DNA of 26,942 bases, from positions 1 through 26,942 of the forward strand of contig NIVC01000047.1 in the NCBI GenBank assembly GCA_002269645.1, written 5' to 3'. Positions 2,471 through 22,153 of the stretch are shown here, piece after piece. Made by a program: the position numbers and the translations under genes. How positions within the stretch are numbered: position 1 is the stretch's first letter; every line of letters begins with the position of its first letter. Under the pieces are notes generated by a model, which worked only from the letters and a program-made list of their open reading frames with translations, did not search any database and was not told the origin of the DNA. This stretch comes from Macrostomum lignano. Taxonomy: Eukaryota.

Positions 2471-3110
2471 TTACGCTGTCTTATGAAACTCCGGCCACTT
2501 GCTGAAGGCGTCCACGATGACCAGGTACGTGCGACCGTTAACGGGCCTGGCGAAGTCGAGGTGCAGCCTCGCCCAAGGTTCAGCAACTTGTCCGGTCACC
2601 GCGTTGACTTGACCAAGGATCGTCGGCCAGTCCAGTCTCAGCTCTTTCAGCCAGTCGCGACCCAGTACTGCAACATCGCTTTGCTCGACTACAAGCAGCG
2701 TCAACCGCCGATCTTGGCCGTTGTGCTGAACCGCGAGCTCTGCCTGTCCGATGGGTCGAAAGCTCTCGTCCGTGTAAGTTCGCAGCACCGTGGATGTCGG
2801 CGACAAACGGAGACCCGGCAGAACATCCTCCTGGAGGCTCTTCGGGATGACGGTGAGGGCGGACCCGGTGTCCACCTCGAAGCGACACGGCTTGCCTTGC
2901 AGTTGCAGCTCAACCGCCAGTCCTTTGCTCGATCCGCTCTGCCGGAGGCTAAAGAGTGGCTCCTGCAGCTCGGTCGGCTCGGGATTCACCTTGTGCAGCT
3001 TGGAAGATCTGCAAACTTTTCGGATGTGGCCGACCTTGCCACAGTTGTGGCACTTAGCATCGCGAAGCTTGCACTCCTTGCGATTGTGAGCGCCACCACA
3101 GCTGGCACAC
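2471..3110 (-). pseudogene. pol: CCHC knuckle plus aspartic protease fused in frame to an integrase-core fragment
   Basis: CHNCGKVGHIRKVC lies just upstream of ORF 2471..2989. The ORF has FEVDTGSALTVIP and LGRDWL, then runs directly into EPWARLHLDFARPVNGRTYLVIVDAFSKWPE. Confidence 0.9.
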
Positions 3111-3660
3111 AGCGACTGTGAGGCGCTGGCTGAGCTTGGGGTGCTTGGCGAGAACCCTGCTTCTGCGGTGGCGGCCTGTTATGAAACTGCAGGTGATCCT
3201 CTGGTTCAGCCTTGTGCGTCATCTCCGATGAGGATTTCTCCGCAGTCTCCAAAGAGTCGACCTTAACAACCACAGCTTTGAAGTCGGGTTTGTCGATTTC
3301 CAAGAGCTTGGCGCGGTAAGAAGCGTTGCGAAGGCCGAAAATGAGCTGATCCCGCAGCCTCTCGCATAGGTTTTCCCCGAATTCGATGTGCTCGGAAGCT
3401 GCCTTGAGACCGGCTACGAAGTTAGCGAAGCTCTCGCTCGGCCTTTGGACACGCTGCTGAAAGGGAAATCTGGCCGATAGCATGGAAGTTCTCGCAGCGT
3501 AGTGCTCCCTCAGAATTTTCGACAGCTGTGTGAAATTCTTGGAGACCACAGTATCGGGCTGGCACAAGTTGCGGAGCACTTTTTAGGCTTCTTCCCCGAT
3601 TGCTGTCACCAGGGTGGCCACTTTCGCCTCTTCTCGGACCTCCGAGAACAAAATTCTTGG
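2986..3660 (-). pseudogene. gag: Gypsy gag (capsid) of element A
   Basis: KVATLVTAIGEEA*KVLRNL...FQQRVQRPSESFANFVAGLK...RLRDQLIFGL. The premature TAA at 3583 sits at a position that is usually Tyr, and there is a frameshift before the knuckle. Confidence 0.88.
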
Positions 3661-4606: not shown

Positions 4607-4733
4607 CAGGGCTGAATAAGCGTGCATGACATTAGCGCATGTGTAATTAAGCGCAGGCGTACATATTTCAACTTTTAAACCAACCCATTTTTTCACTCCA
4701 CACAAGCGAATCTCCGCTCACTGCGCTCTGCAG

Positions 4734-6385
4734 GCAGCCAACCTGCAGTGACAGCCACGGCGTGCGGTGTGCGGCCTGCACACGATACGTGCCATGCGAT
4801 CCAGTGCTGCAGCAGATTCTACGAGTACAGAACTGAAAAAATCCTAAATCAGAATTTTCACAGACACAGTTATCATGGAGTTAGAAAACGGCTTTGGTAT
4901 ACTGATGACGGAGTTCACCTCGTTCGGGCGACCAGACCGAGCTCGACCAACGAGCTCAGAGTGAGCTTCAGCTTCCAAGAGAAAGACATCATGAGACGCC
5001 TGAGCACAGTCAAGGGCCAGTTGTTCACACTCATCAAGTTCATCTTCAAGAGACACTTGCCGCTCACTCTGGACACACCTGGACTCAAAACCTACCATGC
5101 AAAGACTCTGCTCTTCGCAATTCTGGAGAAGCATGACTCAAATAGTTGGCGTACTGAGGCTTGGCTGTCCCACAATCTGATCGCTCTGCTCAAGGAGTCT
5201 CTTGACGTGATGCTGAAATTTATGAAGTCAAGGAGGTCGCCCGATGAGTGCATGCCGCACTTCTTCATGCCCGACGCTCCGCTCTACTTCAAGAACGCTG
5301 GAATCGGCGGCGACTTCGACAACACAAAGTCGAGGGTTCGAGATCGACTTTGTGAGCTGAGAAGCGACATCGGCGGAGTGGTCGAGCAGCTGAGGAGACT
5401 CGTGAGACCTCTGCAGTCAGAGAAGTTCTACTTTCACCCGTTCACTCTGCTGCCTCTGACAGCGCCGCCCGCTGTCAGAGAGATCAGGGAAGGAAGTCAG
5501 CATCGAGAAGAAATGTACTACAAGTTTGCAGACGTGTACAGTGTGGTGCACCAGTGTGTGAGCGAGCTGCAGTCGGAATCGAGCGACAGAGACACCCTGA
5601 TGAGGCAGCTCAGTCTCCTGCATGAGCTGCAGTGGTGCAAGTGCGCCGCCCTGTGCATGACCGCCATGGCGCATTTGAAGTTCGGAGAATCTGAGGAGGC
5701 TGAGAGACTCGCGATGGAGCTGCAGAGACATCAGGTTGAGTCAGGGTTGAAGCCACAGGATATTCGTCACCGAGGGTCTGAACATGGCCCAACTGAATTG
5801 CCAGAAGACTCAGACTGGGCGTGGAGGTTCTGCCTCCCCTGCGACTCTCCGCCTCGCTTCCCATTCCTTCCCGAGTTCACGCAGACTCTGTTCACAGCCA
5901 GACTGTTGCAGCCTCTCTCCTCCCACCTGTACGTGAACTTCCGCTGCCTGAGCTGGAGTCTCCAAGCTGAGCTGCTCCGCAATCGCGCACCTGCAATCGC
6001 ATTCGATCATTGGATTGAACAGCTGCTTGGAGACCCGGACTTGGAGGAGCTGCTCACTCTGGCTCACTACAGCGACTGCCGCGAGCACGTGGAGCTCAGC
6101 CTGCAGCAGATGGAGATGATCGAGAAAGAGAGATGCGTCGCCATGGAGACGCAGGACGAGGAGAAGATCGGCTGGGTCAGGCAGAAGCGGTGGCGAGTTT
6201 CGAACCGCAGCGGCAGCGACAGCGGCGCTCACCGCATCAGGGAAGATGAGGAGCGGAGGCTTTGGGCAAGGGCGAGACTGCAGCAAGACTGGGTCGACTT
6301 GGGTCGCCTGGTTGCCATGGAGACTGCAGCGGAGCAGAGAGACAGCTGGACTCATGCCAAGCTCAGTCGGATGAGACTGCAGTGA
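4734..6385 (+). CDS. Terminal coding exon of a Mab-21/cGAS-like receptor (cGLR) nucleotidyltransferase with a long helical C-terminal extension
   Basis: Open 545-codon frame with collinear Mab-21 motifs: HDTCHAIQC (D.VPAI.C), GVHLV, ELRVSFSFQEKDIM (WRLSFS.AEK.L), LIKFIFK, LKTYHAKTLLF (SYHLKT), CMPHFFMP (CPHYFIP). There is no ATG before the motifs. Upstream is a T-tract, a CTCAC branch-like motif and ctctgcag (AG 4732-4733), followed after the stop by an AT-rich 3' UTR-like region. Alternative AGs exist at 4736-4737 and 4747-4748. Confidence 0.85.
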
Positions 6386-6711
6386 CCTGAGGACTTCGTT
6401 GCTCAGATTTCCAAGTTGTGCTGGACTTGAATTTCAGCTCCAATAACTGTGTACTTTTTTGCTAGGTTTACAGACTTTTTTTATTGAATTCAGTTGAGTC
6501 CGTAAGCTTGGTAAATTTTATTGTATTAACTTTTGTTTAATGTATAAAATTGATTTAATATTAAATTATGCTGTAACTATGATTGCGTTTGTCTGCAAAT
6601 TTTCCTTTGTTTCTGCTTTTATGTGCTTTTTAGGAAATGAGCACATCGAGAACCATTGAGTACGAGTAGCCCTCCTGCTATGAATTGCAGTTTTTTACAT
6701 TTGTGATGCTA

Positions 6712-7895
6712 CCTCGGCTGTCCAGAAAGTCGTGAGAATGTATTTAAAAAACCAGTCAGAACTATCAGAAAACACGATAACTGTACTAGTTGGTAATCCA
6801 ATCTCGCCTTGCGTTGATTACAGCTTGGCAATGGTCAACGAGTCGCTGAACCTCTCTTTTTAAGCAATCTTAGCAAGCACAGAACGGGCTGCGTGAGGTC
6901 GCACGTTGTCCCACTGCCAAATAACATCCGACAGGTGAACTGACTTTGACCTGAGAGTACGCCATAGGTCTCCCGTGTGCCGAATGAATTCAACTATGCC
7001 ATCTGCATCAACAGTTTGCTTTGGGGCTGTGGAATTAATGGAGAAGTGTTTGCTTGGAGTGAAAGCAACCAGAAGCATTGTCTTTACATTGCCGACCGAG
7101 TGCCTGACAACCTGGGGCCGATGATCCCCTTGGCCAAGCCAGCACCTGTTGTTTTGCTTTGTGCCAGTGTTGTTCAGGTACACCCACGTCTCATCCTCCA
7201 CCACATACTTGTCGCAAAATTTTTCCACGCCCTCGTTGTAAAAAAGCCTGCGAATTGGCGTGGCACAATTGATGCGAGCATGCAGTCTTGTTCTCCTCGG
7301 AGGGAGCATGTGGAACCCAGACAGCAGAAACGTTTCGAAGGTGCAAATCCTCGGTCAAAATTTCGTGCACTGTTGTTTTTCCAACTTCCAAAAAGTCGGC
7401 GAGGTCTCGGACACTAACTTTTGAGTCCTCTTCAACGAGAGCTCGGCAGGTTTCGATCAGTTCCGCTGTCCTTGTTGACCGTGGCCGATCAGTCCGAGGA
7501 GCTGAAGCCAGGGGAAATGCTTCATCACGGAACTTTGAGTACCATCTGTAAACCGTTGACTGACCTGGTGTGGCATCTCCATAAACTTTGAGCAGCTCGT
7601 CATGACATCTAATAGCGGAGATTCCAAGACGGTATCTAGCGTAGGCATAACCCTGGAAGTCTTCCATTTTGAAGAACTCGCTGTCAAAATTTTCAAGCTT
7701 GATCACTGCGTTGCATTTGCTATTGAGCACTTTATACTGAGCTCGCCCCTGCCCCCAATTTTGCTACTAGAATAACAAGAATTTACACTATAGACATATA
7801 TGAGTCTATTATTGAAATTTTATGCATATCATGTCAACAGCTTGCTGCTTTCTTGCTTGACTGACACATTCTCACGACTTTCCGGACAGCCGATA
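6712..7895 (-). mobile_element. Tc1/mariner (mariner-type) DNA transposon, internally deleted
   Basis: TIR core tcggctgtccagaaagtcgtgagaatgt (6714-6741) versus acattctcacgactttccggacagccga (7866-7893) has 1 mismatch in 28. TA flanks lie at 6710-6711 and 7896-7897, with a transposase remnant inside. Confidence 0.93.
6786..7667 (-). pseudogene. Mariner transposase pseudogene
   Basis: ATG at 7667; HTH region STVYRWYSKF; WVPH motif; frameshift near 7290-7310; DETW and WDNVRPH catalytic motifs; C-terminal LVDHCQAVINARRDWIT. The YSPDL/third-Asp segment is missing. Confidence 0.9.
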
Positions 7896-8340
7896 TACAT
7901 TTATATATCCAGTGCATGCAGAATTTGCTTCTTTCGTTCCCTTTTTAGAATTTTCATAGACATGAGAAAGTTTCCAAAGGTTTTCTAATTTTCTATGTAC
8001 TTCTATTTTGCATTTTCACCTGCGGACATCGACAATTCCCGGAGGAATGAATATTCGGTATATAGCAATGAAGTGAGGTTTTCTCGGCGATTTTGTTCTG
8101 CGGAGTGCAGCCAAATGCAGTTTTGTAGTGCCACATGAATATAAATTGACTCTATACAGGAAAGCAGAGAGATGTGAAGCTCGGTGCAGTGAGCGAGACA
8201 TTGCAGACAAAACAATTTTGAATACAATGCACTAAGGCACTACTCAGTCAGTAGTTAGTGGGAATGCGGTTGCACCTTATTTAAAGCAAGAAGACATTGA
8301 TAGCAAAAAAGAGAACAATGTCTTGGCTGTCCTCAGATCG

Positions 8341-8428
8341 CTACCCTGTTGCTACCCTGTTGCTACCCTGTTGCTATCCGGTTGCTACCCTGTTGCTATC
8401 TGGATGCCATCCCGTTGCCAACCGGTTT
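8341..8428. repeat. 11-bp minisatellite (CTACCCTGTTG), 8 copies
   Basis: Copies 1-3 and 5 are perfect; copies 4 and 6-8 carry substitutions. There are no spacers. Confidence 0.95.
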
Positions 8429-8634: not shown

Positions 8635-8668
<34 letters not shown>

Positions 8669-9997: not shown

Positions 9998-10462
9998 CTA
10001 GGATAAAAGCTTTTTATGAAGTCCAAAATTGGTGTTTCTTAAGGAAATAAAAATCCTATCGTGTACTGTTATTACGATATAACGATAGACAACAATAATC
10101 TTTTTTATTATTCTTTCTGCTTCTATCCAGACCATAAGCAGCTGCAGAATCATTTAACCAGTACGTGCATGGGCCCTGTAGAGGAGTAGTCGGTTCAGTA
10201 ATTTGAAGCGGCTAGCATAGTCTATGGCTTTTCTTTCCATTTTGGTGCGTTCGCTCATCAGAGCTTTCGCAGCCTACTTGGGCTGAATTGATTCCAAGCA
10301 AGATGTGCCAAAGGGACAAAGCTGAATTTCACTTGTCTATGGTCACTAGGCCTGTCACTGTAGCTTTCAGTTTGGTCTAATAAGCATTCATTGGGTCAAG
10401 AAAAGCAAGAAGCCAGCTTTAGAACCAGAGAGTACCGAGCTAACATAGAGAGACAATTGAAA

Positions 10463-10860
10463 TGACAGAATACCACAGATTGCACAATCGACTAGTAGAA
10501 TGCGTCTCGAATTAAAAAACCATAGATACTACTCTTCCTGCGAATATTTATAAGTAGTTGTAACTAATTGTAGGCATAGGAATTGCAGCCACAAGCTGCG
10601 CACTGGGTCTCGAGATTTTGCCATGATAACACTGCACTGCTTTTCGCCGCAGAATAAAAGAATGTTCGTTGATCTACGACGTATGATTACTAAAAAACAG
10701 AAGACAATCACAAGCCCATGCGAGTGATATCGTCTATGGTGATTCTTCTCCATACTACTTTCCCACAGCTTCACAGGAAGAGTATCACAAAGCGAAAATA
10801 ATTTCGCAATGAGATTTTTTCTTCAGGGTGGCTGAATGAGCATTCTGTGGTATTCTGTGA
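10463..10860. mobile_element. Candidate ~400-bp MITE with terminal and subterminal inverted repeats
   Basis: Perfect 15-bp inverted repeat acagaataccacaga (10465-10479) / tctgtggtattctgt (10844-10858). A nested perfect 11-bp inverted repeat tactcttcctg (10530-10540) / caggaagagta (10774-10784) lies inside. No TSD was identified. Confidence 0.5.
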
Positions 10861-12221
10861 TTAAAACTGAAACCAAAATTCCAATTCAAATCTTTGGGCT
10901 CCTACGAGCTGTACTTTTTGACCATAAACAAAAGTTGGAACTATTTTTCGCTCGTAGACAAAAAATACTCGGCTGGTCTGGCATATGATTACTGCATTAA
11001 TTCACTTGATATTCACTGCCCAAATTCTCGAATTAAGCAATATATATATATGAAGTGGGGTCGCCTTTCTTACCTCGTAGCTGCATTGTACTTGCTGCCA
11101 CACTGCTGCCTTTGTCTCGTTTTTTTGGGGTTGCGGGTCACTGATTATTTTATAATTTTCTCATAGCTCGTAAGAGGAGCTTCAACCTTCAACTTTTTAA
11201 CTTTTAGATGTGCGCATGCAGGTAGCTACTAAAGTGGCAAAATAGATCGGAAATCTCAGTGACATGTCGTCATTCTTTCTGTAGGAAAACTGACTCAAAG
11301 CTTGTTGAAAAAAATGGTTACAGAAATAGGAAATTCAGGAGTGCACGAAAAATGGATCGTAGGATATTTCAGTACAGCAAAGTGGCAAACCAGGTAAGTT
11401 TATCATGGTTGCTTTAAAAATGTTTTTTATTGTTGATAAAATTTAAGCTGTTTAAGAAGCGCAAACATACCAGCATCAAATCAAGTCTACAATGATGGGT
11501 GTGTCTAAAGAGTTTTGGACAATATGCTATCCGTGATGCTAAATTCTGTTAATAGGAAATACCAGCGTTGAGTTAGGCTAATAAAGAGGGGTCTAAGGCC
11601 GTCGGGGATTGGTATATTGAGCTCCTGTGGACTAGAATATACCTAGGCCAATGACGATATGCACTAAGAGTTTTTGCTTGAAAGGATAAGCACCACTTGC
11701 TAATTGAGAAAAGGAAAGAGAAAGGGTAGACAAGCGGTAAAAAGCCACCCGGCGGGGGGATAAATGGCTAGTAGGTAACCATAAAAAAGAAATATTATTA
11801 GAGCATCAAACAAATAAAATATACAACTAATTAAATTTTTTTTAATTAAGATAAGAATCAAATAAAAATTTATTACTAGACATTAAACTTATTTAAACAC
11901 AAAAACACCATAGAATATAAAAACACCGATTACGAACAGAATTACATGTACGTCATCGTTACATATCGCTTGTTTGATTGAATAAAAATTAACTACTCGT
12001 ACCTGCCCTCTAATGATGGACAAAACACATTTTCATTCAATATTTAATGCTTTCGTTGACATTTGTTGCTTACATTGGGATTAGTCTTTATAGTTGCCTA
12101 TGCGCGTCAACATGTACACGTAAATGATTTTTAAAGTTTGCTTTTTTCCGATTGTGTTTTTGTGACTCTTTCGATATACGGGTATATATTATGATGCAGG
12201 TACAAAACTTTTAATAGCCAT

Positions 12222-12259: not shown

Positions 12260-13342
12260 CATTTCTTTTCAACTTTGCACTTGTCTATGTTTGTTTTACT
12301 CTGTTTTCTGTCCCTCTCTGTCCAATTCAGTCTTGTTATTTTCTCTCTCTCCGTCACTGCCTTCTGATTGGCTGCTCAATCTCACCTCTTTCTTTCGTCA
12401 CGCACTCCCCACCCCTCCTTGTCTTATCTTGCACTCAACCCCCCAAATTGAAATCAATTTATTAGATTTAAAATCAAATAATTCTCAATGCCCTAAATGT
12501 ACTGATTTGAGCCTGCCAACCTGTCTGACTCCTTCCTGGTTATTTAGTTAGTTTTGTCAACTCCAATTAAATAAATTGTTTAACACTACGAGTAATTAAA
12601 TTATTCTCTACTCTGTTCGTCTATTTCCATTGGCTTGGTAGGATTTGCGTCTGCACAGATTTGTCTCTTCATTTGTCTTGGCTCGCTGGATTTTGCACTC
12701 GACGCAGTCTCTGCTTCTCTTCGTGGTCCAGGCTTCAGACTCAGTGCTCACTTAGGATTCAGGACTCAGGACGGATGGACCGGACAGCAGCCTGAAGAAG
12801 ACATGGGTTCGTCTGAAAGCTAAGTTTTCATTTGAAGTGTTTTTAGTTGCTGTTTAAATTTCAACTCATTTACATATAATTATGCTGTTCCCTCGCTACT
12901 CATTACACATTGTTTATTTTTCACTTTCTTGCTTAAACCCGCGTAGATTTTCACTCTGTCATTTTGCTTGCGGATTCCACATACAGTTAAGCTGCTCTGA
13001 TTAGAGCAGCGGTCACTCGGACTAGCTCAAAGGTCAACATGCTCTTGTCGCTGATTTTGGTGAAATGCGGAAGCCGACGCTGATGCAGATGCGTGCGTAG
13101 ATCGAGGTTCTGAAGAAGAATCTGAAGGCTTTAAAAGGTGCAGATGGGGAGATTCAGGTAGATCTATCCAAAGATAAGATGGAATCGGAGTTGGCTGAGA
13201 GCTATGGATATTCGTTTTGCTGCCGCAAGTGTATTAACTTGTTGGAAAATTCCCTCAGTTAAAGTGTGGCGCAACAGCAAACAACCCCCAAGCTCTGTTC
13301 AACCTCATTGAAGCATCTTTAAGTGTCAGCTACCAACCTTTA

Positions 13343-13756
13343 ATGGGACAGTTGCATGTTAGAAGACCCCCTGGGATCAGTTTTTGTCATCAGTGGATTC
13401 AAATTCATCGCTCGGTGATATTCACAAATTCAGTTATTTGCTCGCTTCTCTCTCCGACTTGGCCAAGTCTGGCAGTGACTGGCGCGAATTACGCAGCTGC
13501 GGTCGTCATTCTGCGAAATCAGTTTGGCAAGCCAGATCTGAAAGTCAGAGACTCAATGCATCAGCTGTCAGAGTTTAGGCTAACTGACACCTCGCTTTCA
13601 AGCCTGAAACAATTTCATGACGATGTTTTTGCTGCCGTGCGCAGCCTTGAAGCTCAGAATGTGCAAGCTGACTCGTATGAGACATTGTTGCTGCCAAACC
13701 TACTCAAGCGGTGTCCCGATGAGTTAGGGTTGGACATGCTAATACCAGCCGCTTAG
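13343..13756 (+). pseudogene. gag: BEL/Pao gag fragment (DUF1759-like)
   Basis: VTGANYAAAVVILRNQFGKPDL...LKQFHDDVFAAVRSLEAQNV pattern. Confidence 0.8.
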
Positions 13757-14636
13757 TTAGAATCGCAGTGCAATTCAGTTAGGGACTCTTTTATATCTTT
13801 TTAAGCCAGGCAATTATTTGAGGTTCGTGAAAAGGCTATTTTGGTTGGCAAGAAGACTGGACATGATCGCAAGCGGTCCGGAGGCTCACGGAAGCCTTCA
13901 CTTTCAACTCGAAAGTTCAAGCTAAACTGAAGAACACATTAAAGGAATCTGTAAAAGTCTTTTGCACCTACTGCAATTCAGGACACAAGTATGGAGATTG
14001 TGATAATTTTGCACCAGCGGCCAGCCGTCGTGATTTTAGCACTGCACCAGGAAAGCCACTGCTTTCGATGCGTGCGCACAGGTCACGGTGCTCATATATG
14101 CTGTGATCCTCGGCAGTGCAGATTCTGGCGGAGCTGATCATCACGTGAGAATTCGCAACAAAGCTCCAGCTAAAGCTATCATGACCAGGCTACTCTAGAC
14201 GAGCGAGCACCAGTTGCTGCACAAAATAACGTCTCTGAACATTTTTCTTCGGACATGATCACTACCAGCAATCTTTCAGTGGTCATTCCTGTTACCAAAG
14301 CTATACTGCTGAGTGCTGGTGGTCAGCAAGTGATTACAATGTTACTCAATACAGCTAGCAGCAGATTCTACACCAGAAAGGATGTATGTGATCTCTTAGG
14401 CATCACAGCGATCAAGATTGAGCCATTGTCTGTGTCGAAGTTCACCGGTCTCAATGCAACAACCGAATCAGGCACTGCTAGATTATCAATCAGAAAGATA
14501 AATTTGCGTCACCTTCTGAGCATCCGCGCTAATATGGTCAAATGATATCTGTCAGCCTCAGCGCACAGTCCAGTCTTAGTGAACCAGTTTCCTCATCTGC
14601 GCAATTTAGACTTAGCAGATCTGCACGAACCATGCG

Positions 14637-16420
14637 ATGAAAGCACGCCAACTTGTGTTGATCGGAGCTGATCAATATTACGATGTGGTTTTGTCCTTTT
14701 TCGAGCCAGTCAAGTTGCCTGAGGACTATGGCAGTCCCTTGAGCTTTTCAGCAGCTGGGCGCTATGTTATCAAGCTTTCTTGGAAGCATCCAGATGACTC
14801 AACGCATGCTACGCAATCACTTCGATCTTGCGTGCAAGCGTTTGGACTCGACTTTGCCCACTCTCTTACACCAAACAGGTACAATCATTTGAGAGCATCT
14901 GAGATCACCCGTGAGCAGGAAGCCAGAGGCTTCATTGAGAAAGTGGGTGACGCCGACCTACAGCAGGATAATGACTGTCATTATCTTCCTCATAGCTGTG
15001 TCATGAGCACACGAAACTGTGTATTGTCTTTGTCGGTTCTGCACGAGCTTTCAGGAAAGATTAATCAATCAGCGACCATTTACAAGTCGGGCCGACAGAT
15101 TTTCCTTAAATTTCCGATATTCTCTTGCGCTTCCGTCGTAACCCTGTTGAAATTTCTGTTGCTATCCTTAGTGACATTGAGAAAGCATTTCTCAAAATTT
15201 CGATTCATGCTAGCGATCGCAATTTGTTGCGTTTTCTGTGGCCCAATTTGGCAGACAATAAGCAAATCTGTCATCTGCCATTACGTTTGACATGTTCGCC
15301 AGGTGTGCTCCGATCTACCATCCAGACACAATTGAGTCTGCTTTTTTAGAATGTGCCAGAATTTTTCGGAAAGACCTTGACGTCGATAATTTCGTGACCA
15401 CTTGAGGTTATGACACAGAAGCTGACACGAAAAATTGTTTGATCTTGGTGGTTGGTATGAATATGCGTCAGTGGATGTTCAATTCTGCTTTATTCAACGA
15501 ACATCTTCCGGAACAAGATATGGGTCACGTCTAAAGGTCCTGGGGCTCATCTGTTGCTGGGGTAGTGATGTCTTTCGTATGGACTGCCGTAAATCGGCTT
15601 GTGTTCACAGCGAGCATTGTTCAATACTGAGTAAGCTGTCCTCAGTGTACGATTCTCTTGGACTAGTTTGTCATGCATTGATTTTTTTCAGAATATTGCT
15701 TCAGGAGCTGTGTGTCAAACAGTCGACTGGAATGAGCCTCTTCCACCTGACATATCCCAGGCTTGGCAATCCTTGCAGCAGTCTTGGTATGGCTGCATAT
15801 TTCAGTTTTTTTTCGATATTTACTTCCGCAAGCTTAGCGCCAAGCCAACAAAAAATTCAACTGCACGGCTTCTGTGATTTTATCGAGTTGGCCTTTGCTG
15901 CTTGCATCTACGCACGTGCTGAATCTGACGACGGTGCCGTCGACACGGTGCCCATTATGGCAAAGTCTCGCGTTACACCGTTATTGAATCTGTCAATTGC
16001 TCGCGTGGAGTTGCTAGGTGCCTTGATCCTATCGCGCCTTATGTACCGGGTCTCTCAACAATTCCCAGGCGCTGATCGCTTTTTCTGGACTAACAGTTTA
16101 ACAGCACTCTGCTGGATCATTAACATAGAGAAGCTTCGCAAGGTGTTCGTTCAGAATCGTAGACATTCCATCTAGAGGCTGTCGACCAGAAAATCTGCGG
16201 TTGAACACCATTTTGACGATTTTCGATCGTCTTTGAATCGTTTCCTTAGCCAGTGGCCGAATATTCCACGTCTCAGTCTGCTGAGGTGCTCCTTTCCTCT
16301 GTGACTGCAACCACGTTCCCTGATCGAGAGTCTTTTTTGGATTCTCCAACATTTGATTTGTCCTTGATTGCTGATGTCGAGGGGTTTTGTAGTTGTAGCA
16401 AGTTATTTCACGTCACAGCT
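14637..16420 (+). pseudogene. pol: BEL/Pao RT and RNase H fragments
   Basis: ORFs 14637..15290, 15125..15349 and 15435..16175 carry the Pao motifs listed above; the last coding motif is FCSCSKLFHVTA near 16385-16420. Confidence 0.87.
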
Positions 16421-16539: not shown

Positions 16540-17850
16540 TGACGGATGCTGACAACTGATTGCTCGGGTCAGTGGAATTGGAGTGGAAATAGGCGCTATC
16601 AAAGCATCCATAGCCTGAACGAAAACCTTTGCCGTAACCCTAACCGACAAAGCCGACAACCCACGAATAGTTCTCAGCCGTTTAGTTTGATGCTATCTGG
16701 GTGCTAAAATATTGCAAAGATCTTCAACAGAGTAGCTCGCAGCTGCTGATTTGGATCCTCGTTGCCTGTCCTTGACTTGCCCAAACCGATGCTATTTGAT
16801 CACTGCCACAAGTATGCTTATCAACACCAGAATAAAAAAGCACACAAAGCCAGAATGTAGACCTTTTTAAAGAAGCTCCGCTGCATGAAGTTGCGAAAAT
16901 GTGATATCTGATCCAAGGGCAGCGTTGCAGAGCGACAGAGTGGCGGGCATCGAGCTGAACTGACGGAGTTGAGAGCCCATGGAAAGGTACAACACGCAGG
17001 CAAAGGCAGAAAACACCAGAGACAGTGAAGCAAGGTAGGCAACCAATCGAGTCTCACAGCAGCTTACTGTGGCGATAAAGTGCCTTAGATTTCGGGTGAG
17101 CCTAGCGAGTTGAAACAGCCTCAGCTGAAGCAAGAATGTGTCGTCAGCAAGGCAGTTGCAGAAATTCTGATTCAGCTGCATCACAGCCTGTAGATTTGAG
17201 ACGCCAGTAGACGCTAGGCACCTGCGAACCGGGCAGATCCAGGCTATCGCTGGTAACACAAAGGTCGCAGATACCAGGAGGTTCCAGCAGACGTAGTTAA
17301 CACCTTGTATCCGAGAGTCACAGTGGTGTACCCAAGACTCCAACCTAGCGACTGAGTGGCGCAGAGTAAATGTTCCAAGCGAATTCGCAGCCTCCAAAAG
17401 ACTCGCAGTTGATGGCGAAGGCAGTGTAAGTGAACATTGAGGCATCTGGATAGAATAAACTGAGTTCCAGCTTGATTTTCTTTGTGTGGTGGGCATTCAT
17501 TCAGTTAAATTCAGAGAGTGACGGCAGCATTTGGATTGTCGCATTGAAGCGAGTTGGCAGATCGACAGAATCTGTGGCGTTGCTGGCATCGATTTGCGAT
17601 GCGAATTGCGAAGCCTGCCGACTGCATCAAGTTGACAGTTTCAATTCGGCTCAGGCAAGGTGATGCCAGCAGAAAGCCGTATACCGCATTATCAGCAATA
17701 AACTTAGACCGAGCCGGATTTTCTGCAGAGAAAAGCGCTGGCACGCCAAACTTAGGAAGACAAGGAAGCACTGCTTTGGCAACGCTAGCTGACTGCAGCC
17801 AGGAGAATTTGAGATGATTTAAAAGTCTGCTATGCAACTGGAATTCTGGA
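16540..17850 (-). pseudogene. Decayed non-LTR (LINE) reverse transcriptase remnant
   Basis: In order on the minus strand: VAKAVLPCLPKFGVPALFSAE (KA...KSPG.DG..AE-like), IQGVN...VSATF (PQG..LSP-like), CLADDTFLL (YADD-like), VTAKVFVQAMDALIAP. Confidence 0.5.
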
Positions 17851-18221: not shown

Positions 18222-18395
18222 GCCACCTTTGTGACTTCTCCTGTCCCAATCCACTGCATAGAAGACGATAAAGACTTACTATTCAATGATGGTGCTGAGC
18301 GCTATAAACCACCCAATAAACTGACACCTTTAATTGGAGGCTAAACTGGCTTTGTTGTCTCTTTAAGAGGCTGAATAGGGGGCCACCTTTGTGAC
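18222..18395. repeat. 160-bp tandem duplication: copy 1 (18222-18381) and first 14 bp of copy 2
   Basis: gccacctttgtgac recurs at 18222 and 18382. Copy 2 continues at 22008-22153 after the LTR element. Manual alignment gives ~19 substitutions and 2 gaps over ~146 bp (~86%). Confidence 0.93.
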
Positions 18396-18552
18396 TGTTC
18401 TGTTTTGGGGCTGGTCCGCACAAGTAATGCTGCCTTAATTCTGGCAGTAGGTTATTATATTTTATTTATTGTCGCGGGATAGCCGAGCACTTATACTAGT
18501 GCATACTTTGGGACATAGAAGAACATAATGGTGAGTATGCGTTAATCCAAAA
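18396..18552 (-). repeat. 3' LTR of element C
   Basis: 9 mismatches in 157 bp against the 5' LTR (manual count, ~94%). The minus-strand TG start is mutated to TT. Confidence 0.97.
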
Positions 18553-18563
18553 TCTCCCCTTTT
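18553..18563 (-). promoter_or_regulatory. Polypurine tract of element C
   Basis: Plus-strand tctcccctttt abutting the LTR. Confidence 0.9.
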
Positions 18564-18618
18564 ACGAGCGTAACGGTTTATCGCATTCAAGTAATATTCT
18601 CTTCCACTCTCCTTCTCG

Positions 18619-21600
18619 TCAAGAGATCTCGGGTTCTCCGAACTTCTTGTATCGAAACCTGCGTTCTGGAACCCCTTTGTTCAATCGTTGACTTCGCCAT
18701 GGGACATTATTTGTAGTTGTCGGCTTGGGCACCGGTGCGTGTACAACTCTGGCTGGCGGGCTGGTAACATTCTTGACAGGCGAATTGATGCTAATTAGCT
18801 GCTCCTGCGGCAGACTCTTCCGGATAAATACGCGGTTTCGACGCAGGATCCGGCTACTGGCCAGCTTGACGTAGTAGTCTCGGTGCTTGCCAACTTCTAC
18901 AATTATCCCTTTAGCTTCCCAATGCTTTGTTACTGGACTCTGAAGAACAACATGAGCTCCAATGTGGAGGGGTGGCATAGTTTTGTCGCAACATCGTTTT
19001 GTCGCATCGTAGTGCTCTTGAACGCGCGCCTGAAATCTCGCTGCAGTCCTCTCCATCTCGTAGAATCGTATATCTTATCCTTTCAAACCTTGGCAAAACT
19101 CTTTCGGTGAACTAGTGAAGTATCCCGTGTACTGGGTGTCCAAATACCATGATAGAAGGCACTCTACCATCATACAGCGGAGTATTACGCAGTTGCAGCA
19201 AGCCTTGCGCTAATTTATCTTTGTGAACGTCATTTGCATGGTCGTCCCATGCTCCACGTATAATTTTCTTTACGCTCTTGACAGCAGCCTAATATTTGCC
19301 GTAACTTTGATGATGATAAGGAGATGAGTTTTGAATCTGCACTCCCCAGCGACTCAAAAAAATTAACAAAATGTGTTGCTTTAAATTGAGGACCGGAGTC
19401 TGAGCAAAGTTTTTCAGGCACTGATGTATGAAAGAAAAGTTCTCGACACGCGTTAATGAGTTTTTAAGTTGGTGCTCGATCACCAAAGTTCCATAGAGAT
19501 GGCCAACTGGAATAGGCGTCCACGATTACCAGGAACGTTTTGTTGGCGTGTTCACAGAAATCTGCATATAAGTGCTGAAAACATCGTTCTGGCGGATTTA
19601 ATGTGCTCATGGGCTCCCTAACTTGTGACGGGAGGTGTTCCTGGCATGACTTACATTGTCTTATAGTGCTCTTAATGTCTCGGTCGATGCCTGGCCAGTA
19701 CACGGCCATTCTAGCCCTCTGTTTTGTCTTGGTAAGTCCTTGGTGGCTTGAGTGCAGCTGTGTAAGAACCTGCTTTCTCAAAGCTCGTGGAACGACGCAT
19801 CGACTTCCGCAGAGGATGATCCCGTCTTCGACGATAGGCTTTTCGCGCACATTCCAGAATGGTCGCACATTGTTGGGCATATTGGCCTTTTTGTTCAGAA
19901 ATCCGTCTGTAATGTGCTGCTTTAGGTCCTGCAGATCCTGATCAACAGTCGTGCTCTCTTGCACTCTGCGCAAGCTAGGATCCAGTTCCGCACATTGTAG
20001 AATCATGATGGGCAGTTATGACAGGTGAAGGTCTGCTGATTCTGCTAGCTCGTCTTGTTGAGTCGGATAATCTACAGGTGCTCTCGATAGAGCGTCAGCG
20101 TCGGCATTATTCTTTGCATTTAACCCATCTTGCTTTGTACGCATAGAGATCCAGTTTAGCTCTCAGGCGCTGGATTCTGGGATTCTCGATCTGGTCCAGC
20201 TGGTAGCTGTTCAGAATCGGAACTAGGGGCTTGTGGTCAGTAACGTCGAATTCAGGCAGACCTTCTAGGAAAAGTCTACATTTCTGAGTCGCCCAGACCA
20301 CGGTTAACAGTTCTAGCTCAATCATTGCGTATCTAATTTCGGTATCAGAGATGAATTTGGTCCCGCCTGGACTACGCGCCAGCTTCTATCGGCTTGTCTC
20401 TGCTTGAGCAAGAATCCGATTCCCTTAAGCGGGATGCATCTGTGTGCAAGGCCATGAGTTTGCGCTGGTCATAGTAGGCAAGGACAGGCGTGTTTGCGAG
20501 GTTCCTGCGGGCCTTTTCAAAAGCGTCTTGCTGCTCTTGTCCCCACTGAAACATATTCTTCTCCGATAGCAGCGGTCTCAGCGGGCCTGTTACCTCCGCA
20601 ACTTCTGGAGTAAATGTTCCAACTTGGTTCACGAGACCAAAGAATGCTCGAAGATCAGTAATATTTTTAGGCGCTGGAAATTCGCAGACAGCTTTCACGA
20701 GCTCTGGTTCGATACAGTTAGCCATCTGCCAATACGCGAAATCCCGAAAAGCTTACTTGTGTTCTGAAAAATGTGATTTTTTTATTTAAGGAGATTCCGT
20801 TATCCTGACAGCGTTAAAGAAATTTTCGAACTGCTTGCACGGGCGATTCTCGGTCATTACTCGAAATCAAGCAGTCATCAACGACATGACGAACGCAGTT
20901 CAGGTCTTGAAACGTGTCATCCAACCGTTGATTGTAGAATTTGGCAATCGAACTTATGCCGAATGGAGCCATCTTATACATATATCTTCCCAGAGGTGTG
21001 ATGAAAGTCCATAGGTGCATGCATGCTTTCTTCATCTAGTGGTATCTGGTGATATCCCTTAAGACTTAAGTGCATCAACGCCGGTGAAAGACTTGGCTCT
21101 AGAAGCATCAGTGCTGTCTATTATTTCAAGAGTAGTTTGAGACTGATATCTGGGTCTGATGACGTATTTATTAAGCTGTCTGAAGTCCAATCACAAGCGG
21201 ATTCCACTAACTTTTTTTCGGCGCGACCACAATAGGTACGCACCAGTGAGTCGGGGTTGTCAGTTTGCAGATTATGCACTGTTACTCAAGTGCGTCCAGC
21301 TCCATTTTCAATCTATTGTACATAGGGAATGGAATTCTTCTGGGTGTCTTCACTGAAAATGGTTGAGCGTCGTCACGCAGCTTAATTTTGAACGTTTCGC
21401 CTTTCATAGGCCTTACGATGCCATCGAATACCCTTGGAAATTCATTTATTAGGTCGTCCTCTGTGATGAAATATTTTTCAAGCGTACGAATGGTATTGAT
21501 CACTTGTTCTGGGTGGGCGGATTGCTGCGCCTTCACTTCGGGGCTGTCCGCTTCGCTCAGCTTGACGCCCATTGCCTCGAAATAGGCCTCGATGGTCGCT

Positions 21601-21725
21601 TGCCATGCGTCAAACTCGTCTATAGTATCTGTTGCAAGATCGAGACGCGGGATCTGTAGCCCAGGAAGGCTGAACCGACTGGTACTTGCAGTCACAGCAG
21701 CGGCTCCTGCTCCTTGGCTTGTCAC
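18619..21725 (-). pseudogene. pol: Fragmented gag-pol of element C (gag N-terminus, RT, RNase H, integrase)
   Basis: ORFs 21282..21725, 20814..21035, 20372..20725, 20107..20325, 19464..20006, 19230..19486 and 18619..19056 are collinear, broken by frameshifts and stops. Confidence 0.93.
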
Positions 21726-21830
21726 TGGTCTCGTAGGCGATATCGATCGCGGGGTTTTTTATCCCATCGCTGGATTCGGGCTTTTGCTCATTCTTGCTGA
21801 TCAGATTGATGCTAGCAGCAGGTCAGATAA

Positions 21831-21845
21831 CTGCTTGCGACGCCA
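21831..21845 (-). promoter_or_regulatory. Primer binding site of element C
   Basis: TGGCGTCGCAAGCAG directly follows the CA end of the 5' LTR. The cognate tRNA was not determined. Confidence 0.85.
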
Positions 21846-22002
21846 TGTTCTGTTTTGGGGCTGGTGCGCCCAAGTAATGCAGCCTTGATTCTGACAGTAG
21901 GTTATTATATTTTATTTATTGTCGCGGGATAGCCGAGCACTTATACTAGTGCATACTTTGGGCCATAGAAGAACATAACTGTGAGTATGCGTTAATCCAA
22001 CA
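21846..22002 (-). repeat. 5' LTR of element C
   Basis: Intact TGT...ACA termini, with flanking TSD GTGAC. Confidence 0.97.
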
Positions 22003-22007
22003 GTGAC

Positions 22008-22153
22008 TTCACCTGCCCCAATCCTTTACATAGAAGACGATAATGAATTCAGATTCAACGATGTGCTGAGCGCTATAAACCACCCACTAAAACTGACACC
22101 TGTAATTGGAAGCTAAACTGGCTTCCTTGTCTCTTTTAGAGGCTGAATGGAGG
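22008..22153. repeat. Remainder of copy 2 of the 160-bp tandem duplication
   Basis: Aligns to 18236-18381. Confidence 0.92.

What the first reader, a model, noticed from the sequence alone, without database searches (positions are those of the whole stretch)
4734..6385. cGAS-like receptor (Mab-21 fold) with an atypical ~300-aa helical C-terminal extension, intact amid dead transposons
This is the only long undisrupted ORF in the window. It has the cGLR C-lobe motifs and a candidate third catalytic Asp (HDTCHAIQC), and lacks the vertebrate cGAS zinc-thumb insert between QEKDIMRRL and LIKF. Established knowledge: animal cGLRs are nucleic-acid-sensing cyclic dinucleotide synthases that are often lineage-expanded. 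Inference: the extension (e.g. CAALCMTAMAHLKFGESEEAERL, TPR-like) may define an uncharacterised receptor architecture with a different ligand or partner. This is the best candidate for a novel immune system here.
Basis: partly seen in the sequence, partly recalled or inferred. Interest (0 to 1): 0.75.

Follow-up and report, generated by a model that had tools for sequence, protein, structure and literature searches.

The report
Flatworm cGAS-like receptor gene, last exon only
The long open reading frame is real, but it is only the last exon of a gene from a large, already catalogued flatworm (Macrostomum) family of ankyrin-repeat cGAS-like receptors, so the window holds the back half of the enzyme plus an uncharacterised tail domain, not a complete receptor.

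Summary
The ORF is real. It is open from 4679 to 6382 (568 codons; the longest ORF in 50 shuffles of the window was 211 codons), and the exon starts at the AG acceptor at 4733/4734.

It is 81-84% identical to annotated Macrostomum lignano proteins built as ankyrin repeats + cGAS/Mab-21 nucleotidyltransferase + a ~250-aa C-terminal domain. At least 75 clusters (50% identity) match at E<1e-10. An AlphaFold model of a full paralogue matches cGAS structures (Foldseek E=6e-8).

Three points do not:
- The ORF is one exon. The GS and DxD catalytic motifs and the ankyrin repeats lie on upstream exons in the paralogues and are nowhere in this window.
- The architecture is not new. Li et al. 2023 catalogued and cloned five M. 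lignano ANK-cGLRs, one of them (PAA68676.1) from this subfamily.
- The extension is not a detectable TPR. It has no Pfam, PDB-sequence or Foldseek match and was found only in this lineage.

The window cannot show whether this copy belongs to a live gene or is a 5'-truncated fragment. dN/dS is 0.6-0.8, as between annotated paralogues, and all indels are in frame. It is a new member of a known kind, of low to moderate interest.

The parts
4674..4733 (+). Conserved 3' end of the preceding intron, with pyrimidine-rich tract and AG acceptor (ctctgcag ending at 4733)
   Evidence: DNA homology to paralogous loci L001 and L003 starts at window 4674/4673, about 57 nt before the exon. L001 and L003 share the same boundary with each other.
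4734..6382 (+). Large 3' coding exon of an ankyrin-cGLR paralogue. Its first base completes a Gly codon begun in the missing upstream exon.
   Evidence: The frame is open over 568 codons. It is 81-84% identical to M. lignano P0114 and P0001. tblastn of the paralogues aligns only to 4700-6382.
4784..4786 (+). Codon of the candidate third catalytic Asp (RPAHD)
   Evidence: It aligns with the RPAxD column of the family, where the Pro is invariant. It lies in strand E146-155 of the P0114 model (mapping).
4859..4906 (+). Window-private in-frame 48-nt insertion (HRHSYHGVRKRLWYTD) in a loop
   Evidence: It appears as a 48-nt gap against all four close paralogous exons. More distant subfamilies carry longer inserts at the same site.
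4913..5428 (+). Mab-21 / cGAS C-lobe: last core strands and helix bundle. The Pfam Mab-21_C match covers 5069-5284.
   Evidence: Pfam PF20266 at 24.8 bits. Family profile against cGAS at E=6e-8 over this stretch. The P0114 model matches cGAS by Foldseek at E=5.8e-8, target TM 0.52. Coordinate map.
5441..6199 (+). Family-specific C-terminal domain of about 250 aa: helical hairpins plus a small three-stranded sheet. It is an orphan domain.
   Evidence: AF2 model at pLDDT 82. No Foldseek hit at E<=0.001, no Pfam family and no PDB sequence match. A profile search found it only in M. lignano proteins and one JGI metagenome contig.
6200..6382 (+). Charged tail (RWRVSN...SRMRLQ), predicted as one long helix at low confidence and dispensable in the family
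   Evidence: pLDDT is mostly 50-73 in the window model, and the matching stretch of the P0114 model is also low, 35-60. The segment is absent from the paralogous exon in L002 and from P0115, P0116 and P0118. P0114 and the copy L003b end in the same RLQ-stop.
6383..6493 (+). TGA stop (6383-6385) and conserved 3' flank
   Evidence: Sequence. Homology to L003 continues to window 6493.
2474..3582 (-). Degraded LTR-retrotransposon gag / zinc-knuckle / aspartyl-protease ORFs upstream, inside what would be the intron
   Evidence: Pfam Asp_protease_2, RVP and zf-CCHC.
6863..7763 (-). Mariner/Mos1-like transposase remnant downstream
   Evidence: Pfam HTH_48 and HTH_32. The reading frame is broken into two ORFs.

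Best explanation
Window 4734-6382 is the last, large coding exon of one paralogue of the Macrostomum ankyrin-repeat cGAS-like receptor (ANK-cGLR) family.

In complete family members the order is: ankyrin repeats; then a Mab-21/cGAS nucleotidyltransferase whose spine helix, GS loop (MTGSYAEGWANS) and metal-binding DID sit on upstream exons; then this exon. The exon supplies the strand with the third catalytic Asp, the C-lobe helix bundle that closes the active-site cage, a ~250-aa lineage-specific C-terminal domain, and an optional charged tail.

Inferred mechanism for the whole protein, by analogy with cGAS and cGLRs: a ligand binds, the NTase is activated, and it makes a nucleotide second messenger. 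Neither the ligand nor the product is known, and it is not known whether the ankyrin repeats or the C-terminal domain take part in sensing.

The exon alone cannot be an active cGLR. I take it, at slightly better than even odds, to belong to a still-coding gene whose upstream exons lie beyond the window's 5' end, across an intron enlarged by a retrotransposon.
For: Shown:
- Identity to M. lignano proteins is 81-84% over the whole ORF.
- Paralogue exon maps put the GS/DID exon upstream of an intron of 0.49 kb (L003) to 6 kb (L001).
- The acceptor and 57 nt of the intron are conserved in the window.
- Family members carry MTGS-X20-DIDW.
- The family profile hits cGAS at 6e-8 and cGLR1 at 3e-6.
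- The AF2 model of P0114 (pLDDT 83, pTM 0.84) matches cGAS, MAB21L1 and MB21D2.

For continued coding:
- Every indel against four paralogous exons is a multiple of 3.
- Only 2 of 84 family-conserved coding positions are changed (a further two deviations lie in the intron-derived ORF codons 10-11).
- The private substitution load (38 of 1570) equals that of annotated paralogues.
- The 3' flank is conserved.
Against: - No upstream exon is found anywhere in the window, which includes 4.7 kb upstream.
- That upstream stretch is retrotransposon debris.
- 5'-truncated copies of this exon with open frames exist elsewhere in the M. lignano genome: L003 36283-37860 and L004 9999-10643.
- dN/dS is 0.60-0.82.
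- The private substitutions are 26 nonsynonymous to 12 synonymous against a neutral expectation of 78% nonsynonymous. The chance of no stop arising neutrally is 0.18. Constraint on this particular copy is therefore not demonstrated.
- No exact match to an annotated product was found.
- Expression is untested.
Confidence: 0.55

Rival explanations
1. It is a dead, 5'-truncated gene fragment. A duplication or a retrotransposon-associated rearrangement copied only the last exon (plus 57 nt of intron), and the frame is still open simply because the copy is young.
For: - There are no upstream exons in the window.
- Transposon debris lies on both sides.
- Other partial copies with open frames exist: L003b, L004 and the partial models P0184-P0186.
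- The private nonsynonymous-to-synonymous ratio does not differ significantly from neutral, and P(no stop) is 0.18.
- Two substitutions fall at otherwise conserved positions, Q112K and R486C.
- No annotated product in the protein collection has the sequence of the one candidate product looked up.
Against: - Homology stops at exactly the same intron position at which the complete paralogues L001 and L003 stop resembling each other. The break is therefore a property of the intron, not a truncation signature.
- All indels are in frame, including a private 48-nt one.
- The acceptor and the 3' flank are preserved.
- The same intron is 6 kb in a complete paralogue, which is longer than the upstream sequence available here.
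Confidence: 0.38
2. It is expressed on its own as a catalytically dead protein made of the C-lobe plus the C-terminal domain, for example from the first in-frame ATG at 4991 (464 aa). That protein would modulate or act as a decoy for full-length paralogues.
For: This is mostly inference. The frame is preserved, and an in-frame ATG at 4991 leaves the C-lobe helices and the whole C-terminal domain.
Against: There is no evidence for a promoter, for trans-splicing or for a transcript. No exact product is on record. A C-lobe without its N-lobe is unlikely to fold as modelled, because the P0114 model is one compact body with pTM 0.84.
Confidence: 0.05
3. It is not a cGAS/Mab-21 relative at all: a chance ORF, or an unrelated helical protein with a marginal Pfam hit.
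For: In the single sequence the Pfam Mab-21_C hit is only 0.7 bits above its cut-off, and phmmer of the ORF against PDB sequences finds nothing.
Against: There are 106 homologues, 75 of them at E<1e-10. The profile-level hit to cGAS is E=6e-8. The structural match has probability 1.0 over about 370 columns. The ORF length is far beyond the shuffles.
Confidence: 0.01

Closest known systems
Macrostomum lignano ankyrin-repeat cGLRs catalogued by Li et al. 2023 (PMC9980059). Screen constructs #89-93 include PAA68676.1 (Mlig016402g1, our P0168) and PAA93208.1.
   Same: It is the same subfamily. P0168 is 83% identical to the first sequence (P0001 module) of the family alignment A1 and 85% to P0114. 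It has the same motifs (MTGS...DIDW...RPAQD), the same C-lobe and the same C-terminal domain. The screen sequences, printed truncated in the supplement, run into that C-terminal region.
   Different: The window copy is a separate, unannotated paralogue: 81-84% identical to the nearest proteins, and 92-96% in DNA only to partial copies. It is represented here by its last exon only. It has a private 16-aa loop insertion and ends in the RLQ-stop tail variant.
Vertebrate cGAS (e.g. mouse cGAS, PDB 4k9b)
   Same: The Mab-21/NTase bilobed fold is shared: Foldseek E=5.8e-8, target TM about 0.52. Sequence similarity holds across the C-lobe helices, and the SFSxxEK motif and the FF[IM]P motif are shared.
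   Different: There is no zinc thumb. Identity is only about 17%. The flatworm family adds N-terminal ankyrin repeats and a ~250-aa C-terminal domain. Ligand and product are unknown.
Invertebrate cGLRs (cGLR1 entry PDB 8gjy; coral and oyster cGLR expansions, some fused to ankyrin, TPR or death domains)
   Same: Both are lineage-specific expansions of cGLRs with added interaction domains. The profile hits cGLR1 at E=3e-6. hhalign to a Stylophora cGLR gives E=5.7e-5 over the C-lobe.
   Different: The C-terminal domain here was not found outside the Macrostomum lineage. None of the 15 biochemically characterised cGLRs in Li et al. is from a flatworm.
MAB21L1 / MB21D2 (PDB 5eom, 7lt1)
   Same: The fold is the same (Foldseek E=5e-6 to 1e-5).
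   Different: The sequence match is weaker than to cGAS (E=0.055 for MAB21L1). [quoted passage not shown]

Membership tests
cGAS-like receptor (cGLR), criteria of Li et al. 2023 | Active-site motif h[QT]GS X8-20 [DE]h[DE]h X50-90 h[DE]h | tested here: not met
   For the window sequence, no GS or DxD element exists in the ORF or in any of the six frames; only the third acidic position (RPAHD) is present. Full-length paralogues do carry MTGS-X20-DIDW. The family meets this criterion, but the window's exon alone does not.
cGAS-like receptor (cGLR), criteria of Li et al. 2023 | [quoted passage not shown] | tested here: inconclusive
   The C-terminal helix bundle is met (Pfam Mab-21_C; profile against cGAS E=6e-8). 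Only the last strands of the NTase core are in the window. The rest lies on exons not present here.
cGAS-like receptor (cGLR), criteria of Li et al. 2023 | Predicted structural homology to known cGLR / CD-NTase enzymes | tested here: met
   This was tested on the complete paralogue P0114 (84% identical to the window ORF in alignment A2). The AF2 model has pLDDT 83.4 and pTM 0.84. Its Foldseek top hits are cGAS (E=5.8e-8, probability 1.0), MAB21L1 and MB21D2.
cGAS-like receptor (cGLR) | Ligand-activated synthesis of a cyclic di- or oligonucleotide | not testable with these tools
   This needs biochemistry. M. lignano constructs were in the published screen but are not among the 15 characterised enzymes.
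Vertebrate cGAS orthologue | Zinc-thumb insert (H/C-rich) between the SFSxxEK motif and the following helix | tested here: not met
   The profile has 13 positions where mouse cGAS has 25 residues. The window segment RRLSTVKGQ has no Cys or His.
TPR repeat domain (for the C-terminal extension) | Match to TPR sequence profiles or to a TPR solenoid structure | tested here: not met
   No TPR family appears in Pfam at E<=1 for the ORF or at E<=0.1 for 16 family C-terminal domains. The best Foldseek E is 0.18 with TM<0.35. The model contains a three-stranded sheet between helical parts.
Macrostomum ANK-cGLR expansion | N-terminal ankyrin repeats on the same polypeptide | tested here: not met
   Seven of 8 top homologues scanned have both Ank and Mab-21_C Pfam hits; the eighth, P0003, has Ank only. 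No ankyrin-coding sequence was found in the window. This is undetermined for the gene as a whole, because upstream exons may lie outside the window.

The most novel reading that the evidence does not exclude
The ~250-aa orphan C-terminal domain accompanies the Mab-21 core in the family members examined. In the model it appears docked to the core as one body; this is inferred from pTM 0.84, as no PAE was seen. It could be a new ligand-sensing or effector-coupling module that gives this flatworm cGLR radiation a non-nucleic-acid trigger or a non-STING output. Truncated copies such as this one might be kept as regulators.
Probability: 0.15. Interest if true: 0.6.

Novelty: new member of a known kind. 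Interest (0 to 1): 0.3.

Why it matters
Li et al. [quoted passage not shown] Macrostomum is the exception, with a large ankyrin-cGLR radiation whose ligands, products and downstream receptors are unknown. This window adds one more, incomplete copy and shows how the family spreads through a transposon-rich genome as whole and partial exon copies. The only element that might reward work is the lineage-restricted C-terminal domain: it folds confidently but resembles nothing known. Working out its role needs a complete paralogue, not this locus.

Tried and rejected
- phmmer of the single ORF against PDB sequences found nothing relevant. A family profile was needed.
- tblastn against phage genomes gave no match, and Rfam gave no RNA family in the window.
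- Two protein-database searches timed out before one succeeded.
- Upstream exons were sought with tblastn of seven paralogue N-termini at E<=10 and word size 2, and with blastn of the L001 exon region at word size 7. Only chance-level hits came back.
- A motif regex over all six frames found no GS or DxD signature.
- I looked for an LTR pair or other repeat boundary that would explain the homology break at 4673. There is none near the ORF; the only direct repeats are at 18.2-22.1 kb.
- I first suspected that RWRVSN...RMRL was a retained intron. I rejected this because the L002 paralogue lacks the segment in its genomic DNA, so it is an indel and not a splice variant.
- hhalign of the family against a coral cGLR aligned only the C-lobe (probability 66%). 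It could not confirm residue-by-residue equivalence of the catalytic motifs.
- An exact look-up of the ATG-start product found no record, so the source locus could not be extended.
- The closest partial copy, L004 (96% identical), is a different locus whose flanks do not match.

Full report
**Observation.** The window holds an uninterrupted frame from 4679 to 6382, followed by TGA at 6383-6385. At 568 codons it is the longest frame in the window; the next is 249 codons, and the longest in 50 shuffles was 211. It has no ATG near its 5' end: the first in-frame ATG is at 4991. The surrounding ORFs are degraded mobile elements. These are gag/protease at 2474-3582 (-), a Mos1-like HTH at 7194-7763 (-), a Pao/BEL element at 13.2-16.2 kb (+), and integrase, RNase H and RT fragments at 19.4-25.4 kb (-).

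**What it belongs to.**
- A search of 1.84 billion representative proteins gave 106 hits at E<=1e-3, of which 75 were <=1e-10 and 36 were <=1e-30.
- Almost all hits that carry a name are from the free-living flatworm Macrostomum lignano. The best are P0114 (Mlig011252g1, 81% identity, 100% coverage) and P0001 (84%).
- Seven of the eight top homologues scanned share one plan: N-terminal ankyrin repeats and then a Mab-21_C-positive region (P0003 has the Ank hits only). The conserved ~580-aa module spans that region.
- The window ORF aligns only to the back two-thirds of that module.
- The front third carries the conserved MTGSYAEGWANS and SDIDWTV motifs. That is h[QT]GS-X20-[DE]h[DE]h, the first two elements of the cGLR active-site signature (signature from Li et al. 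2023).

**Gene structure.**
- In the paralogous locus L001 (P0001) the coding exons lie at 10001-11575, 12986-13351 and 19398-21062. A 6-kb intron therefore precedes the large last exon.
- In L003 (P0114) the same intron is 0.49 kb.
- DNA homology of the window to both loci begins at 4673/4674, about 57 nt before the acceptor. L001 and L003 stop resembling each other at the same point.
- The interior of this intron is thus variable in every copy, so the homology break in the window is not in itself evidence of truncation.
- No sequence related to the ankyrin or GS/DID exons exists anywhere in the 26.9-kb window. This held for tblastn at E<=10, blastn at word size 7 and a motif regex in six frames.
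- The window therefore contains only the last exon. The 4.7 kb upstream is retrotransposon debris on the opposite strand.

**Is it really cGAS-like?**
- On the single sequence the evidence is thin: Mab-21_C scores 24.8 bits against a cut-off of 24.1, and there is no PDB sequence hit.
- At family level it is solid. A profile of 16 diverse modules hits mouse cGAS at E=6e-8, a cGLR1 entry (8gjy) at 3e-6, human cGAS at 7e-4 and MAB21L1 at 0.055.
- An AlphaFold2 model of the complete paralogue P0114 (pLDDT 83.4, pTM 0.84) retrieves cGAS structures first (E=5.8e-8, probability 1.0, target TM about 0.52 over about 370 columns). MAB21L1 and MB21D2 follow.
It also falls in a beta-strand of the model.
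- The zinc thumb of vertebrate cGAS is absent: the profile has 13 positions where mouse cGAS has 25 residues.

**The extension.**
- Beyond the Mab-21 core, which ends near ORF residue 250 (nt ~5428), lies a ~250-aa domain at 5441-6199. A ~60-aa charged tail follows at 6200-6382. Some paralogues lack the tail in their genomic DNA.
- Modelled alone from the window sequence, the region folds confidently (pLDDT 82.3, pTM 0.77). It forms helical hairpins around a small three-stranded sheet.
- It is not a recognisable TPR. There is no TPR or other Pfam family, no PDB sequence match and no Foldseek hit at E<=0.001. The best Foldseek E is 0.18, to generic alpha-solenoids such as CTR9, IFIT1 and BepA, all with TM<0.35.
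- A profile of the domain alone found only M. lignano proteins and one metagenome contig. The exhaustive phmmer search likewise showed no extension-only hit that could be placed in another named taxon.
- It is an orphan, lineage-restricted domain.

**Already known?** Yes, at the level of the family.
- Li et al. 2023 (PMC9980059) state that most platyhelminths have no cGLRs beyond Mab21-like proteins, and that some cGLRs carry ankyrin or TPR modules.
- Their domain table lists M. lignano accessions with Ank_2 hits.
- Their screen constructs #89-93 are M. lignano proteins. #92 and #93 (PAA93208.1; PAA68676.1 = Mlig016402g1 = our P0168) belong to the window's own subfamily. Their printed (truncated) sequences run into the C-terminal region.
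- The 15 enzymes characterised in depth come from insects, anemones, molluscs, hydras and corals. The flatworm enzymes' ligands and products therefore remain undescribed there.
- I could not see the per-construct screen results (their Figure S3).

**Live or dead?**
- Pairwise dN/dS (Nei-Gojobori) between the window exon and four paralogous exons is 0.60-0.82. Between annotated paralogues it is 0.64-0.75, so the regime is the same.
- All indels against the paralogues are multiples of three, including a private 48-nt insertion at 4859-4906.
- The window has 38 private substitutions in 1570 aligned sites, no more than annotated copies with 36-68.
- Of those 38, 26 are nonsynonymous and 12 synonymous, against a neutral expectation of 78% nonsynonymous. 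The neutral chance of acquiring no stop is 0.18.
- Two coding positions that are otherwise conserved in at least 90% of sequences are changed: Q112K and R486C.
- The genome also holds partial copies with open frames. L003 36283-37860 is 92% identical in DNA to window 4913-6459, and L004 9999-10643 is 96% identical to 5535-6188.
- The evidence leans slightly towards a still-coding exon, on frame preservation and the intact acceptor and 3' flank, but it does not exclude a young truncated fragment.

**Mechanism.**
- Shown: the exon encodes the strand carrying the third acidic residue, the C-lobe and the C-terminal domain.
- Inferred from cGAS/cGLR knowledge: in a complete protein these close the nucleotidyltransferase cage formed with the GS loop and the DID metal site. 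[quoted passage not shown]
- Unknown: the ligand, the product, the receptor, and the roles of the ankyrin repeats and the C-terminal domain.
- The product of this exon alone would lack two of the three catalytic elements and could not be an active enzyme.

**Verdict.** The claim of an 'intact' receptor with a novel TPR-like architecture is not. This is a further, incomplete paralogue of a published flatworm cGLR radiation. The orphan C-terminal domain is the only part with residual novelty.

Noticed in passing
window 16870-17496 (-): A 209-codon ORF matches the Pfam polycystin cation channel family (PKD_channel, E=2e-9). It may be an exon of a PKD2-like gene, or a pseudogene, lying between retrotransposon fragments.
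   Followed up: no
window 13238-16172 (+): Pao/BEL-type retrotransposon remnants (DUF1759 gag-like, Peptidase_A17 at E=2e-24), broken into several ORFs.
   Followed up: partly
window 18231-22063: A gypsy-like element lies on the minus strand (integrase zinc-binding domain at 19467-20015, RNase H at 20375-20752). It is bracketed by direct repeats of 155 nt (18396-18550 and 21846-22000, 95% identical) and 61 nt. These could be LTR pieces or an internal duplication.
   Followed up: no
window 8340-8427 and 8635-8668: Short tandem arrays: 11/22-nt units (GCTACCCTGTT) and (GTCT)8.5.
   Followed up: no
L003 36283-37860 and L004 9999-10643: These are 5'-truncated copies of the same cGLR exon, and L003b still has an open frame. 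L003b lies about 0.45 kb downstream of the P0114 stop codon. The copies are 92% and 96% identical to parts of the window ORF, closer than any complete paralogue. That suggests fragment duplication or gene conversion within the family.
   Followed up: partly
L001 5186-5262 and 25681-25757; window 5817-5893: A 77-nt piece encoding the most conserved part of the C-terminal domain (WAWRFCLPCDSPPRFPFLPEFTQTL) occurs on its own, 95% identical, in each copy of a ~20.5-kb segmental duplication that flanks the P0001 gene.
   Followed up: partly
proteins P0007 and P0109 (M. lignano Mlig012150g1, Mlig018330g1): In P0007 the gene model joins the cGLR module to ankyrin repeats and a C-terminal caspase domain (Peptidase_C14, E=2.7e-25); its cluster-mate P0109 is named a caspase p20 domain protein by UniRef. 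Other models in the P0104 cluster carry SPRY names, and P0014 holds two tandem cGLR modules. I did not check whether these are real fusions or merged gene models.
   Followed up: no
proteins P0176 and P0006: P0176, a 347-aa partial family member on a 1-kb contig, is deposited as a 'Kangiellaceae bacterium' MAG protein. This is probably flatworm DNA binned into a bacterial MAG. P0006 is a 48-52% identical relative on a 3.2-kb JGI metagenome contig.
   Followed up: no
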